A DNA stretch of 64,000 nucleotides from assembly GCA_964057225.1 (NCBI GenBank), contig OZ059897.1, positions 14,570,001-14,634,000 on the forward strand, in the 5' to 3' direction. The translations under genes and the position numbers were made by a program. The stretch comes from Auanema rhodensis (lineage: Eukaryota; Animalia; Nematoda). Numbering within the stretch: the stretch's first letter is position 1; each line of letters opens with the position of its first letter. Of the stretch, positions 53,201 through 58,374 are shown piece by piece. The notes below the pieces were generated by a model, which searched no databases, was not told the DNA's origin, and saw nothing but the letters and a program-made list of their open reading frames with translations.

Positions 53201-56200
53201 TATTCATTATATGATAAATGTTTTTAGGTCATTTTTGCATGCTTCAAGCGTGCCGATAAACGTGAGGTTAAAGTAGCTCAATTGGCTGGCTCAGTTGGTG
53301 AGCTTTCTGCATATCATCATGGTGAAATGTCTCTCATGGGCACTATTATTAACTTGGCTCAGGTATGTTTTTAAAGTTTCAATAATTTCAATCAAAATTG
53401 TTTTAGGACTTTGTGGGATCAAATAACATCAATTTACTTTTGCCTATCGGTCAGTTTGGTACAAGATTGCAAGGTGGTAAAGACAGTGCTAGTCCTCGTT
53501 ACATTTTCACTCAATTAAGGTAAAAAAAAATTACTTTGTCAATATATGTTTTTATTTGTAGCCCAGTTTCTCGTGCTCTTTTCCCACCCACGGATGATCA
53601 TGTACTTCGTTTCCTCTTTGAAGATAATCAAAGAATTGAACCAGAATGGTATTGTCCAATTATTCCAATGGTTCTTGTCAATGGAGCTACAGGTTTTTAA
53701 TATTAATTAAATGAATTAATGAAGTTCTGCCTTAGGCATTGGTACCGCTTGGTCGACCAATATTCCTAATTACAATCCTCGAGAAATTGTTGAAAACATG
53801 AAACGGCTTATCAACGGTGGTAGTCTTAAGTCAATGGTTAGTTGAAATCACTGCATTCACATATAGTATTTGATGAATTTAAGCAACCTTGGTACAAAAA
53901 CTTCAGAGGCCATATCGATATGATTGATCCTTCACGATTTGTTTGCTACGGAGAAGTTGCTGTCATTAACGACGATACAATTGAAATAACAGAATTGCCC
54001 GTTAAAACATGGACTCAAGGATACAAAGAAACTGTTTTGGAGCCTATGCTTGAAGGTGTTGAAGGAAAAGGAGAGAAATCCGAAAGAAAACCTCCTATGA
54101 TATCGCAAGTTTTATCTTGAAGACTGCATTTAAAATATGAAGTTTTAGTGATTTCAAGGAGTATCATACCGACACCACTGTTCGATTTGTGGTAAAGTTG
54201 CCGCCTGGAAAGTTGCAGCAATACGAAGCCGAAGGATTGCATAAGGTTTTCAAACTGCAAACTGTTTTGAATACCACTTCAATGGTTAGTTTCAATATAA
54301 TATTAAAATATTGGAATTGGCCAATGATGATTAAAAATATTAAATCTGAATTATAAGAATCGTACTACAGTTCTAGTCTAGTATATCAAGTGCTAATATA
54401 ACCAGACACAAGTACGATGAAATCAGTAATAGCTCGTTAATGCGATGAAGTGCTGAGAGTTTGACTTCGTCTAAAGGCACGAGCATACATTCGAATATTA
54501 TAATGATTACCAAAAGGCGAATCTGAGGCCACTATTCCAAATATCATCTGTGATATCAATTGTTAAATGTCGAAATTTTTTCATGTTATAGGTTTTATTT
54601 GATTCTGCTGGATGCTTACGAAGATTTTCATCTCCGGAAGAAATCTGTCAAGAATTCTTTGGAGTTCGTAAAGCTAAATATATTGATAGAAAGAAATTCA
54701 TGGAAGGCATGCTTCGTGCTCAAAGCGACCGCCTTTCTAATCAAGTACGCATTTGATATCTTATCTTCTGTCATATATCTTGATATAAGTTTTTATGTTT
54801 AATTTTAGGCTCGTTTCATCTTGGCTAAAATTAAAGGAGAAATTGTCATGGAAAACAAGAAAAAGGCAGTTATTGTTCAACAACTTATTAAACATGGTCA
54901 ATTCCTTGTTTATATATATTTTTTTAATTCGATGATTACAGGCTTTGCTCCTGATCCAGTGAAAGTTTGGAAGGAGTTACAGAAGAAGAAGGAACTAGAA
55001 GAAACTGGTGAAGTTGACGTAGATGATGAAGAAGATGAAGAAGATGAAACTAGCGATGAACAGAAGAAACTCGATACTAAGTTATCCGACTATGACTACT
55101 TAGTCGGAATGGCACTTATCAAATTGTCCGAGGAAGAAAAGGACAAATTATTAAAGGTTTTTTTAAATTAGTTTTTATTTTCAAGTAGCATATTGTAGGA
55201 GAGTCAAGAGAAGTTAGACGAATTGAAAAAACTTGAATCCAAAACTTGGGCTGACCTTTGGAACGATGATTTAGAAAACTTCCTTACCGAACTTAAAAAG
55301 CAAGAAACTAAAGAGAAATCTGAGCAAGAAATAAGCATCAAACAAGCTGCAAGAAAGTTCCAGAGCGATAAACCCAAAGGAAAGAAAAGCGCTGCTGTAT
55401 CAGCTGTTAGTCACTCTTTCTGTTAAAAATTGATGCTCTTTTAATTTTAGGAAGTTTTACCTTCTAAAGATGGTATTCGTGTGGCTCCTCAAATTGATAA
55501 AGCCCTGAAAGAGAAATATGAAAAGATGACAGCACCCAAGAAAGAGAAAATAAAAAAAGAGCCGAAAGAACCGAAGAAACCTAAAAAGGAAGGTGGTGAT
55601 ATTATGAAGTTCATGAATTTAAGTGTTAGTTTCTTTTTCCTCCTTTCTTATTTTAACCATACCTGTTTCAGACTGATAAACTCGATAAAACTGAAGGTAG
55701 CGATGTAAGTTTTATATGTTGTATTGTCTTTATTTCGAAAATTTTAGGCTGATTCTGATGATGAATTCAAGTTAAAGAAGTCCAAGAAAGCATCTGATTC
55801 GTCTAAGGAAAACGAGGATGATGATGATATTGAAATTGAGGATAGTAATGATTCTCCAAAGGTGTTTTTGTTTTGTCATGTATGCGTCATGTTTTTTCTT
55901 GCAGAAACCCCTTGCTCCTAAAACGACAGCTGCTAAGAAAACTAAGAAGAAGATCGAAAGTGACGAGAGCGATGATGATGATGCATTTGCGCCAAAGAAA
56001 AAATCATCTAAGAAAGTATGTATTTATTGTGTTTTAGCCTATACATTTATCAAATTGCTATAGAATGATTCTGTGTTTGATTTGTCATCTGATGAGGACA
56101 GTAAGAAAAAACCTGCAGCAAAGAAAGCTGCTAAGCCAAAAGATGCTAAGAAGATGACGGATTTCTTTGGCAAAAAATCTAGTCCATCCAGAAAAAGGAA

Positions 56201-56425: not shown

Positions 56426-56663
56426 CTAATTTTATTTGCTGTACTCATTGATCCTGTGTGCTATTGCGGTTATAATTGAATCTCATTCTAATATTATATA
56501 CTGATTATCTGTATAATTTTGCAAATAAGTTTTTTCTATTTCTGTTCGTTTTGTTTTGAGTTTATGGAGTTTAATACTCGTTCATATCCTTGGTCTAAGC
56601 CTTCAAATGGTATTACGTTGTGTTTTTTTCAGATTTTGTTATGAGCAATTAATCCGTGTTAAT

Positions 56664-58374
56664 ATGCAAGGTTTAAAAGTGTTCAGTCTTGCTGTTTTGT
56701 GCGTTTGTGCTGCTGCTATTAACTTCACCGAAGTTTTGAAAGAGCTTGAAGATGTCAAATCTGGCGAAATTAAGCTGAAATGGAATGGTCGTGAAGTTCT
56801 TTGTAACTGTACTGATAACTGTCTACTGACATCCGAACTGAATGGAGTATTATCTAGATACAATCTATTTAATGTCTGTGTTGGATACGCTTGCTTAACT
56901 AAGCGGGGATATTATGCCGATGGGCAAGAAGAACAAATGAATTATGGCTGCATAGGGATGGACGGGGAAGATTCCGTACCATCTGAAAAATTTCTACATT
57001 GTAGCTCAAAGGGCTACGAAACAGCGCATTGTTGTAATGAATCATTTTGTACATCAAACCTTTCGATTGCTTCTCCCAATAAGGATCTTGCTTTGAGCTA
57101 TGTTACTGCATCACCTACTCCTCTTGCTGTATTCATTGATAGTAGATACGGTTATCTGCTTGGAGTTCCGCTATTTTTCTTAATCCTGTTAGGATATGGG
57201 GTTTGGTCTCTCGCTACAAATAGACGTTCTAGTGAGTTGTTCATTGTATTTTGTTTTAATGTTGATTGTTTTAGGGTCGCCAAGAAATAACTGTAGTCCT
57301 TTGTTGGAAGAAGGTTGCGGAAAGCCAGTATCAAAAGATATAGGCCTCATTTCTGGTTTAACCTTGTCTTCAACTATCTCGGAATCCGATGACAAAAATG
57401 TAAGAGCTGATTATTCTCTCGGATCCGGCTCCGGACCCATCAAAGTTCGACAGCCCACCCTATCAGAAAGGGTCATTATTCATAGTCAAATCGCCTCCGG
57501 AAGGTTTGGAACTGTATTCGCTGGCGAACTTGACGGACAACGTTGTGCTGTGAAAATATTTGATAGGAAAGACGAATCGTCGTTCTACCGCGAAATTAAT
57601 ATGTTTGAAAACTTGCAACTGAGACATCCCAACATCTTGATGACTTTTGGATATGATGTTGTGACCTCAAACCACGGAACACGTTACTGGCTTCTTACCG
57701 AGTTTCATACTTACGGTTCTATTGCTCAATTCTTTTTATATCGTACTGTAGCCCTTCCTGTTTATATTCAAATGGTTCGAAGCATTGCATCTGGTCTTTC
57801 ATATCTTCATATTGCTTTACATGGCGGAAAAGAGAAACCTAGAATTGCTCACCGAGATATCAAGCGGCAAAACCTCCTGGTTAAGAAAGATCTAACCATT
57901 GTTATTGGAGATCTGGGATTGTCCGCATGCGATGATGGCTCATACTATTCGACTTGTGAAAATAAACAGTCTGGAACTATTCGTTATTTAGCTCCTGAAA
58001 TATTGGATAACACAGCAGGAACAAGTTTTGATGCATTATTGTATGCTGATATGTACTCGTACGGATTAGTAATGTGGGAAATGGCTTGCAAAATTCGAGG
58101 ATTCAGAGGAGTTCCTGAGTTTACTACTGAGACTCTAGCTTATCATCATGTTGGTCGTGATCCCGACATTCCAAGCATGAGAAAATGCGTATGTGAAACA
58201 GGATTCCGTCCACACATATATCCTTCTTGGCTGGAAAACGATCTGATGGCTGTTGCCGTAGAATGTATGAGAGATTGTTGGTCTCCTGATGGATTTAACC
58301 GACCTGACGCTACATCTGTTCGAAGGCGGTTTGATCATGCTTGTCGCTCGTTCGACGTTCGGATCGAAATGTAA
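56664..58374 (+). CDS. TGF-beta/BMP family type I receptor Ser/Thr kinase, divergent, one intron only (57232-57274)
   Basis: Signal peptide, Cys-rich ectodomain ending CCNESFC, TM YLLGVPLFFLILLGYGVWSL, GS box SLGSGSG, kinase motifs SGRFGTV, AVKIF, LRHPNIL, KPRIAHRDIK, IGDLGL, GTIRYLAPEIL, ADMYSYGLVMWE. Confidence 0.9.

What the first reader, a model, noticed from the sequence alone, without database searches (positions are those of the whole stretch)
54311..54540. Composite C/D + H/ACA scaRNA hidden in a top-2 intron, with a guide matching U5 loop 1
Seen: the other top-2 introns are ~40-50 nt, but 54285-54591 is ~307 nt. It carries, in order, a terminal stem (TTGGAAT-TGGCC / GGCCA-ATTCCAA), box C, box D', a complete hairpin-H-hairpin-ACA module with a UGAG CAB box in the second loop, box C', a guide and box D. 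Known: this nested layout is that of U85/U87-type scaRNAs. Inference: the 10-nt guide AAAAGGCGAA (54512-54521) is complementary to the invariant U5 sequence UUCGCCUUUU, and the D+5 rule points to the G of UUCG (Gm37 in human numbering). The 3' pocket strand of hairpin 2 (AAAGGC, starting 14 nt before ACA) also matches U5 GCCUUU, which suggests the adjacent U43. The 5' pocket strand does not fit that target, so the pseudouridylation target is unresolved.
Basis: partly seen in the sequence, partly recalled or inferred. Interest (0 to 1): 0.85.

Follow-up and report, generated by a model that had tools for sequence, protein, structure and literature searches.

The report
Intronic mixed C/D–H/ACA guide for U5
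The one long intron of this worm's topoisomerase II gene carries a real, conserved ~220-nt guide RNA that joins a box C/D and a box H/ACA module, both aimed at the invariant loop of U5 spliceosomal RNA; it is a new nematode member of a known RNA class, and it sits in a different top-2 intron in different worm lineages.

Summary
Intron 54285-54591 (307 nt) is confirmed by spliced RNA contigs, and its neighbours are 42-64 nt. It carries, in order: terminal stem, box C, D', hairpin, H box, hairpin, ACA, C', guide AAAAGGCGAA and box D.

The same RNA lies in introns of top-2 in Caenorhabditis remanei, Necator americanus, Angiostrongylus costaricensis, Haemonchus contortus and an unnamed relative. 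One metagenome contig has it in another gene. C box, C' box, guide, D box and AAAGGC-8 nt-ACA are invariant. The stems covary: in hairpin 2, 12 of 17 pairs show compensatory change.

The D guide places 2'-O-methylation on U5 G37. In the window's own copy the 5' pocket strand has decayed (UAAUG), so pseudouridylation here is doubtful.

Only the host gene is conserved. The RNA occupies four different top-2 introns across lineages. No Rfam family matches. C. elegans CeN128 may be the orthologue; this is unverified. Cajal-body targeting is untested, and the UGAG loop motif is not conserved.

This scan earlier reported a different U5 guide (Um41 type) elsewhere in this genome.

Verdict: real, and a new member of the U85-type class.

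The parts
54285..54591 (+). Host intron of the topoisomerase II gene (between ...NTTSM and VLFD...)
   Evidence: Spliced RNA contigs in runs X10-X13 skip 307 nt with GT..AG ends. The flanking exons translate as TOP2.
54311..54322 (+). 5' strand of the terminal stem (outer TTGGAAT, inner TGGCC)
   Evidence: Pairs with 54527-54540 in the MFE and centroid folds. The inner stem covaries among species.
54324..54330 (+). Box C (AUGAUGA)
   Evidence: UGAUGA is invariant in all 7 homologues.
54346..54349 (+). Box D' (CUGA), preceded by an A/U-rich, non-conserved spacer
   Evidence: Present in the window. The relatives have AUGA at the same distance, and the upstream sequence is not conserved.
54359..54418 (+). 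H/ACA hairpin 1 (lower stem AUCGUACU/AGUACGAU); no clear guide pocket
   Evidence: Folds. Every homologue has a hairpin here, with a different sequence.
54420..54425 (+). Box H (AAAUCA, ANANNA)
   Evidence: An ANANNA motif lies in the hinge of all 7 homologues.
54432..54484 (+). H/ACA hairpin 2. Lower stem 54432-37/54479-84; 5' pocket strand UAAUGC 54438-43; upper stem 54444-51/54464-71; loop 54452-63 with UGAG at 54454-57; 3' pocket strand UAAAGGC 54472-78.
   Evidence: Segmentation was verified by script. Covariation: 88.5% of cells paired, 12/17 pairs compensatory, 0/500 shuffles reach the observed value. RNAalifold finds the same structure unaided.
54487..54489 (+). Box ACA, 14 nt after the first A of AAAGGC
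   Evidence: AAAGGC + 8 nt + ACA in all 7 homologues.
54504..54509 (+). Box C' (UGAUUA)
   Evidence: Invariant in all 7 homologues.
54512..54521 (+). D-box antisense element AAAAGGCGAA, complementary to U5 U34-U43. C54518, the fifth nt upstream of box D, faces G37.
   Evidence: Invariant in all 7 homologues. Unique in the window.
54523..54526 (+). Box D (CUGA)
   Evidence: Invariant.
54527..54540 (+). 3' strand of the terminal stem (GGCCA, CU bulge, AUUCCAA)
   Evidence: A separate RNA contig ends at 54545.

Best explanation
This is an intron-encoded, mixed-domain box C/D-box H/ACA modification guide RNA of about 215-235 nt. It is processed from the spliced top-2 intron. A terminal stem brings boxes C and D together. 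An H/ACA module (two hairpins, H box, ACA) is nested between D' and C'. The element upstream of box D pairs over 10 bp with U5 snRNA loop 1 (U34-U43). This should direct fibrillarin to 2'-O-methylate G37 in human numbering. In the family as a whole, the pocket of hairpin 2 pairs with G37-U42 and C45-A49 of the same loop. This presents U43 to dyskerin for pseudouridylation. In the window's species the 5' pocket strand has diverged, so this copy probably keeps the methylation function and has a weakened or lost Psi43 function. Shown here: the motifs, the intron, conservation, covariation, and a weak RNA signal. Inferred: protein binding, the two modifications, and the state of this species' U5 loop.
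For: The intron and its exceptional length are confirmed. A 162-nt RNA contig lies inside the intron at 54384-54545 and ends 5 nt past the terminal stem; no other intron has such a contig. All boxes and stems are present. Homologues with the same order of elements sit in top-2 introns of C. remanei, N. americanus, A. costaricensis, H. contortus and an unnamed nematode, and in one metagenome contig. C, C', guide, D, AAAGGC and ACA are invariant, with fixed 14-nt spacing. Hairpin 2 covaries: 12/17 pairs compensatory, 0/500 shuffles, and slid controls 30-52% paired against 88.5%. RNAalifold finds it unaided. The terminal stem covaries: C-G vs U-A, G-C vs U-A. The 5' pocket strand UUUAG in relatives is the complement of U5 C45-A49. 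Gm37 and Psi43 are known U5 modifications in human, and Gm38 in Drosophila (PMC7960923; PMC13228274).
Against: There is no direct evidence of a discrete RNA of this size; the only RNA signal is one contig at depth 2.8. This species' U5 sequence could not be read, so the pairing rests on the canonical loop sequence, taken from my own knowledge and from the numbering in PMC8283771. The window's 5' pocket strand UAAUG keeps only about two of five pairs. Hairpin 1 has no recognisable pocket. D' and its spacer are not conserved. UGAG in the apical loop is not conserved. It is not known here whether nematode U5 carries Gm37 or Psi43.
Confidence: 0.85

Rival explanations
1. It is an ordinary box C/D guide RNA for U5 G37. 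Its long internal region is only a structured spacer, and the H and ACA motifs and the pocket are not functional.
For: A stand-alone ~105-nt C/D RNA with the same C'-guide-D sequence exists in metagenome contigs L023/L043, so the methylation guide works without an H/ACA insert. In the window the 5' pocket strand does not fit U5. Hairpin 1 lacks a pocket. C. elegans CeN128, a possible orthologue, clustered with C/D RNAs after RNAi (PMC2442092).
Against: AAAGGC-8 nt-ACA, the 58-60-nt size of hairpin 2, an open pocket, an ANANNA hinge, and a 5' strand complementary to U5 C45-A49 are kept in six of seven species, while the stems change by compensatory substitution. A mere spacer would not preserve these.
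Confidence: 0.1
2. It is a cis-acting intronic element that regulates top-2 splicing or expression, and its snoRNA-like boxes are incidental.
For: It is always found inside top-2 in clade V species, and top-2 is the only conserved feature of its location.
Against: It occupies four different introns. It lies in an unrelated gene in L008. Its invariant parts are exactly the trans-acting guide and protein-binding boxes.
Confidence: 0.03
3. It is a chance assembly of short motifs in an A/T-rich intron, or a decayed relic with no function in this species.
For: The motifs are short. The fold z-score is only -2.3. Rfam has no hit. The pocket is partly decayed.
Against: Model R1 scores the window copy at 93 bits alongside copies from other genera. 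The boxes, the guide and both stems are intact. An RNA contig lies in the intron.
Confidence: 0.02

Closest known systems
U85 / SCARNA10 (vertebrates; Drosophila U85, scaRNA:MeU5-C46)
   Same: It is a single intron-encoded RNA with a box C/D core at the ends and an H/ACA module nested inside. Both of its guides aim at loop 1 of U5 snRNA (PMC5733568; the architecture is from my own knowledge of Jady and Kiss 2001).
   Different: U85 guides Cm45 and Psi46, using its 5' H/ACA hairpin. This RNA guides G37, and Psi43 through its 3' hairpin. There is no detectable sequence homology, and no Rfam SCARNA10 hit even at E<=10. The host gene differs.
ACA57 / SCARNA11 (human U5 Psi43 guide)
   Same: The predicted pseudouridylation target, U43 of U5, is the same (PMC7960923).
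   Different: ACA57 is a plain H/ACA RNA. Here the pocket is part of a mixed-domain RNA, and it is degenerate in the window's species.
Drosophila Gm38 guide (scaRNA:MeU5-G38, name from my own knowledge) and the stand-alone C/D RNA in L023/L043
   Same: The methylation target is the same: G37/G38 of U5. Gm38 is confirmed in Drosophila (PMC13228274). L023/L043 carry the identical guide next to box D.
   Different: These are simple C/D RNAs without an H/ACA insert. In human, no guide is listed for Gm37 in the 2021 review table (PMC7960923).
C. elegans CeN128
   Same: It was first annotated as H/ACA and later called C/D. It is predicted to methylate U5 (PMC1474057). Its level responds to depletion of C/D proteins and, more weakly, of Nhp2, Cbf5 and Gar1 (PMC2442092 supplement 4). 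This is the behaviour expected of a mixed-domain RNA.
   Different: Its sequence and locus could not be obtained here; the Deng 2006 and Zemann 2006 papers are not held. Identity with this family is therefore only a lead.
U87/U88 (SCARNA5/6) and the U5 Um41 guide reported by this scan in a DIS3L2 intron (s1-421344)
   Same: They are intronic guides for methylation of U5 loop 1, and the second is in the same genome.
   Different: The target differs (U41). I did not re-examine it.

Membership tests
Box C/D guide RNA | Box C (RUGAUGA) near the 5' end and box D (CUGA) near the 3' end, joined by a terminal stem | tested here: met
   AUGAUGA 54324-30; CUGA 54523-26; stem of 5+7 bp. All are conserved, and the stem covaries in 7 species.
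Box C/D guide RNA | An antisense element of at least ~10 nt ending 1 nt upstream of box D, with the target nucleotide opposite the fifth position | tested here: met
   AAAAGGCGAA 54512-21 gives 10 Watson-Crick pairs with canonical U5 U34-U43, and C54518 faces G37. It is invariant in 7 species. This species' own U5 was not readable.
Box C/D guide RNA | Internal C' and D' boxes | tested here: met
   C' UGAUUA is invariant. D' is CUGA in the window and AUGA in the relatives.
Box H/ACA guide RNA | Hairpin - hinge with box H (ANANNA) - hairpin - ACA | tested here: met
   AAAUCA 54420-25 and ACA 54487-89. All 7 homologues have both motifs. Hairpin 2 is supported by covariation.
Box H/ACA guide RNA | A pseudouridylation pocket whose two strands pair on either side of the target U, with the U 14-16 nt from H/ACA | tested here: inconclusive
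   Six relatives meet it for U5 U43 (UUUAG / AAAGGC, 14-nt spacing). In the window only the 3' strand fits; the 5' strand UAAUG keeps about 2 of 5 pairs.
Mixed-domain (U85-type) scaRNA | An H/ACA module nested inside a C/D module in one RNA, with a target that is a Pol II spliceosomal snRNA | tested here: met
   The order C-D'-hairpin-H-hairpin-ACA-C'-guide-D is the same in all 7 homologues. Both guides fit U5 loop 1.
Mixed-domain (U85-type) scaRNA | CAB box (ugAG) in the apical loops of the H/ACA hairpins | tested here: inconclusive
   UGAG is in the window's hairpin-2 loop and near the hairpin-1 apex of L003 and C. remanei. The aligned hairpin-2 loops read AGAG in the window, L003 and Necator, and AGGG, AGUG, AGAU and AAUG in the other four.
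Mixed-domain (U85-type) scaRNA | Accumulation in Cajal bodies and binding by WDR79/TCAB1 | not testable with these tools
   No localisation data are available. As of 2012, neither Cajal bodies nor coilin had been reported for C. elegans (PMC3388055).
Mixed-domain (U85-type) scaRNA | A stable RNA of the predicted size | tested here: inconclusive
   One 162-nt contig at depth 2.8 lies within the intron and ends at 54545 in run X10. Contigs cannot show RNA ends or size.
Rfam SCARNA / ceN families | A score at or above a family's gathering threshold | tested here: not met
   There are no gathering hits in the window or in six homologous loci. The best sub-threshold hits are generic C/D or H/ACA models.

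The most novel reading that the evidence does not exclude
This is the first mixed-domain C/D-H/ACA guide RNA family recognised in nematodes, animals in which coilin and Cajal bodies are not documented. It supplies the guide for U5 Gm37, a modification with no assigned guide in the human table. It is held in one host gene (top-2) while moving among at least four of that gene's introns. That would imply selection for co-expression with top-2 rather than for a position, similar to other nematode non-coding RNAs that ride in introns of germline-expressed genes.
Probability: 0.4. Interest if true: 0.65.

Novelty: new member of a known kind. Interest (0 to 1): 0.55.

Why it matters
U5 loop 1 aligns the exons during splicing, and its modifications (Gm37, Um41, Psi43, Cm45, Psi46) are conserved from insects to humans. 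The 2021 review table lists no guide for Gm37 in human. A conserved nematode RNA with a perfect G37 guide, and in most species a canonical Psi43 pocket, makes both modifications testable by genetics in C. elegans and its relatives. The family also offers a clean natural experiment. The host gene is fixed across Caenorhabditis and strongylid parasites, while the intron changes four times. The window's species shows one of the two guide functions decaying while the other stays invariant.

Tried and rejected
- Rfam at gathering and at E<=10 gave only generic sub-threshold C/D or H/ACA hits.
- A search with one top-2 exon against cluster representatives and against the word index found no close relative of the window. 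It still led to L003.
- The top-2 genes of Pristionchus pacificus, Mesorhabditis spiculigera and Brugia malayi, and of the unnamed L001/L002 organisms, carry no copy, either by pattern or by covariance model with filters off. This says nothing about copies elsewhere in those genomes.
- The metagenome pattern scan returned 82 loci. Only L008 (composite) and L023/L043 (plain C/D) are convincing; the rest look like chance matches in mostly non-nematode DNA.
- Attempts to tie the RNA to C. elegans CeN128 failed. The Deng 2006 and Zemann 2006 papers are not held, the available supplements give no locus, and text searches for the guide sequence and for K12D12 found nothing useful.
- No U5 gene lies in the window or in any fetched locus, and the findings index gave a blank by sequence. 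This species' U5 loop therefore stays unchecked.
- A telomerase-RNA reading was considered and dropped. I saw no conserved stretch resembling a template for the nematode telomere repeat in the aligned copies.
- Hairpin 1 and the D' spacer were inspected for a conserved second guide. None was found, apart from a weak GUU(C)GUA similarity before AUGA in the strongylids and L003.
- Exons were translated and searched one by one.
Full report
**The observation**

The host gene on the + strand is a topoisomerase II. Its exons translate to TOPRIM and TOP4c sequence. Contigs of four public runs, which the tool only guesses to be RNA, carry the mRNA with its introns removed, so they do contain RNA. They skip 307 nt with GT..AG ends, placing the intron at 54285-54591. 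The eight other introns laid on this stretch are 42-64 nt.

- outer and inner terminal stem, 54311-22 with 54527-40
- box C, 54324-30
- D', 54346-49
- hairpin 1, 54359-54418
- box H, 54420-25
- hairpin 2, 54432-84, with UGAG in its loop
- ACA, 54487-89
- C', 54504-09
- guide AAAAGGCGAA, 54512-21
- box D, 54523-26

The minimum-energy and centroid folds recover the terminal stem and both hairpins, with z = -2.3. The guide plus D box occurs once in the window, against 0.04 expected by chance.

In run X10 a separate 162-nt contig (depth 2.8) lies wholly inside the intron, at 54384-54545. It ends 5 nt past the terminal stem and 46 nt before the 3' splice site. No other intron has such a contig. This is weak but positive evidence that part of this intron outlives splicing.

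**Relatives**

Rfam has no family for the element, either at gathering thresholds or at E<=10.

One top-2 exon was searched by reference and led to a Logan contig (L003/L004) from an unnamed nematode. Its top-2 gene carries the same C'-guide-D string and the same AAAGGC-8 nt-ACA string.

Full-length nematode TOP-2 proteins were then used to fetch annotated genes. The element is inside top-2 of:
- Angiostrongylus costaricensis (L005)
- Necator americanus (L007)
- Haemonchus contortus (L092)
- Caenorhabditis remanei (L090)

A pattern scan of metagenome contigs added two things. One is a further composite copy, L008, which has a 13-bp terminal stem and sits in the intron of an unrelated gene. The other is a plain ~105-nt C/D RNA with the same guide, in L023/L043.

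Taken exon by exon, the window's TOP-2 is closest to trichostrongylid and other strongylid proteins (about 80% identity) and about 70% identical to Caenorhabditis. The window therefore comes from a clade V rhabditid near the Strongylida.

**What is conserved**

All seven composite copies share the same order of elements. From box C to box D they span 203-304 nt. The following are invariant:
- UGAUGA of box C
- UGAUUAC of C'
- AAAAGGCGAAUCUGAG (guide and box D)
- UAAAGGC
- ACA

Each copy has an ANANNA motif in the hinge.

The terminal stem always begins one nucleotide before box C and directly after box D, and it covaries (C-G vs U-A; G-C vs U-A).

Hairpin 2 is 58-60 nt in every species and aligns almost without gaps. 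On the structure I drew:
- 88.5% of cells pair
- 12 of 17 pairs show changes on both sides
- no shuffle out of 500 reaches any of the five measures
- sliding the partners by 1-3 columns drops pairing to 30-52%

RNAalifold predicts the same lower stem, open internal loop and upper stem without being told.

A covariance model of hairpin 2 through box D scores the eight copies at 84-121 bits, counting L003 and L004 separately. It finds no second copy in the window.

It also finds nothing in the top-2 genes of Pristionchus pacificus, Mesorhabditis spiculigera or Brugia malayi, even with filters off.

**Targets**

The U5 loop sequence and numbering are human...U34 U35 C36 G37 C38 C39 U40 U41 U42 U43 A44 C45 U46 A47 A48 A49... 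This comes from my own knowledge, and the C36-Gm37-C38 numbering agrees with PMC8283771.

The D guide forms ten Watson-Crick pairs with U34-U43 (eleven in C. remanei). The fifth nucleotide upstream of box D, C54518, faces G37. By the standard box D+5 rule, this predicts Gm37.

For the H/ACA part, the substrate's 5' segment pairs with the 3' pocket strand and its 3' segment with the 5' pocket strand. AAAGGC pairs with G37-U42. In L003, Necator, Haemonchus and C. remanei the 5' strand is UUUAG, the exact complement of C45-A49. Angiostrongylus has UUCAG, and L008 has UUAG within a longer strand. [quoted passage not shown] That is a canonical pocket for Psi43.

Gm37 and Psi43 are established U5 modifications in human, and Gm38 in Drosophila. 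The 2021 review table lists ACA57 for Psi43 and leaves the guide for Gm37 blank (PMC7960923; PMC13228274).

**The window's own copy**

The 5' pocket strand here reads UAAUG(C). By alignment with UUUAG, only the G opposite C45 and the U opposite A49 still pair. Comparison shows this is a lineage-specific decay of a pocket that is intact elsewhere, not a different target.

I put the chance that this copy still makes Psi43 at roughly one in three. The methylation guide is untouched.

Hairpin 1 has no recognisable pocket, and its sequence differs in every species. The spacer before D' is also not conserved. I assign no target to either.

**Host and position**

The RNA lies in four different introns of the same gene:

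| Intron position | Species |
|---|---|
| after ...KPFQ | C. remanei |
| within ...MADQ/DQDGSH (Toprim) | Necator, Angiostrongylus |
| after ...NTTSM | the window |
| in the acidic linker before KLSDYDYL | Haemonchus, L003 |

The window has short introns at the first two places and none at the last. Either the RNA has moved repeatedly within top-2, or an ancestor had several copies that were lost differentially. In both cases the gene, not the intron, is what is kept. This suggests that expression together with top-2 is what matters. That last point is inference.

In the window, C. remanei and Haemonchus, box D lies about 65-80 nt from the 3' splice site.

**Is it a scaRNA?**

In working terms it is a U85-type mixed-domain guide for a spliceosomal snRNA. 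Strict membership needs Cajal-body localisation and a CAB box.

UGAG is present in the window's hairpin-2 loop. The aligned loops read AGAG in the window, L003 and Necator, and AGGG, AGUG, AGAU and AAUG in the other four. UGAG appears in the hairpin-1 loop of L003 and in the upper part of hairpin 1 of C. remanei. This is compatible with a loose AG-containing signal, but it is not evidence for one.

A 2012 paper states that neither Cajal bodies nor coilin had been identified in C. elegans (PMC3388055).

**Prior knowledge**

I could not find this family described. A lead is C. elegans CeN128:
- it was first annotated as H/ACA and later reassigned to C/D
- it is predicted to methylate U5 (PMC1474057)
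- it clustered with C/D RNAs after RNAi (PMC2442092)
- its Z-scores respond to depletion of both C/D proteins (Nop58 2.41, Snu13 4.71, Nop1 2.54) and H/ACA proteins (Nhp2 1.48, Cbf5 1.26, Gar1 1.70) (PMC2442092 supplement 4)

A few plain C/D RNAs in that table also respond to both protein sets. I could not obtain the CeN128 sequence or locus. If CeN128 is the C. elegans orthologue, the RNA has been cloned but its composite nature and Psi43 pocket went unrecognised.

This scan has also noted a separate U5 Um41-type guide in a DIS3L2 intron, and U5 gene arrays, elsewhere in this genome. I did not test those notes.

**Limits**

- Only one reads call was available, and it returned contigs, which cannot give RNA ends or abundance.
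- This species' U5 was not readable.
- Covariation rests on seven sequences, three of them strongylids.

**Verdict**

The pseudouridylation question is resolved at family level: the target is Psi43, and the pocket is degenerate in this species. It is a real, conserved new member of the mixed-domain U5 guide RNA class, with an unusual history of changing introns within one host gene.

Noticed in passing
window 54105-54148: This top-2 intron has GC..AG ends rather than GT..AG, according to the spliced contigs in all four runs.
   Followed up: no
L023 1066-1184 (-) and L043 223-341 (-): A stand-alone box C/D RNA of about 105 nt carries the identical U5 G37 guide (ATGATGA ... TGTGACTA-CA-AAAAGGCGAA-T-CTGA). 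It lies in two A/T-rich metagenome contigs of unknown organism.
   Followed up: partly
L008 179-440 (-): A composite homologue with a 13-bp terminal stem lies in the intron of a gene that is not top-2. The upstream exon ends ...DDYQEITSGK. The contig is 54% G+C and its organism is unknown.
   Followed up: partly
L003 1835-1863; L005 6736-6762; L007 5118-5147; L090 2011-2100: An extra small hairpin sits between ACA and C' in L003, Angiostrongylus and Necator, and C. remanei has an insert of roughly 100 nt there. The window has only 14 nt at this place.
   Followed up: no
L005 6581-6596; L007 4953-4968; L003 1672-1687: There is weak shared GUU(C)GUA similarity just upstream of the AUGA that stands at the D' position in the strongylids and L003. 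It could be a second, lineage-restricted methylation guide. It is absent from the window.
   Followed up: no
L090 1949-2059: Hairpin 2 of the C. remanei copy scores 21.7 bits (gathering score 80) against the first hairpin of Rfam ceN126, a Caenorhabditis H/ACA snoRNA. This is probably generic H/ACA likeness.
   Followed up: no
window 56556-58374: A long, nearly uninterrupted ORF for a receptor serine/threonine kinase-like protein follows top-2 on the same strand.
   Followed up: no
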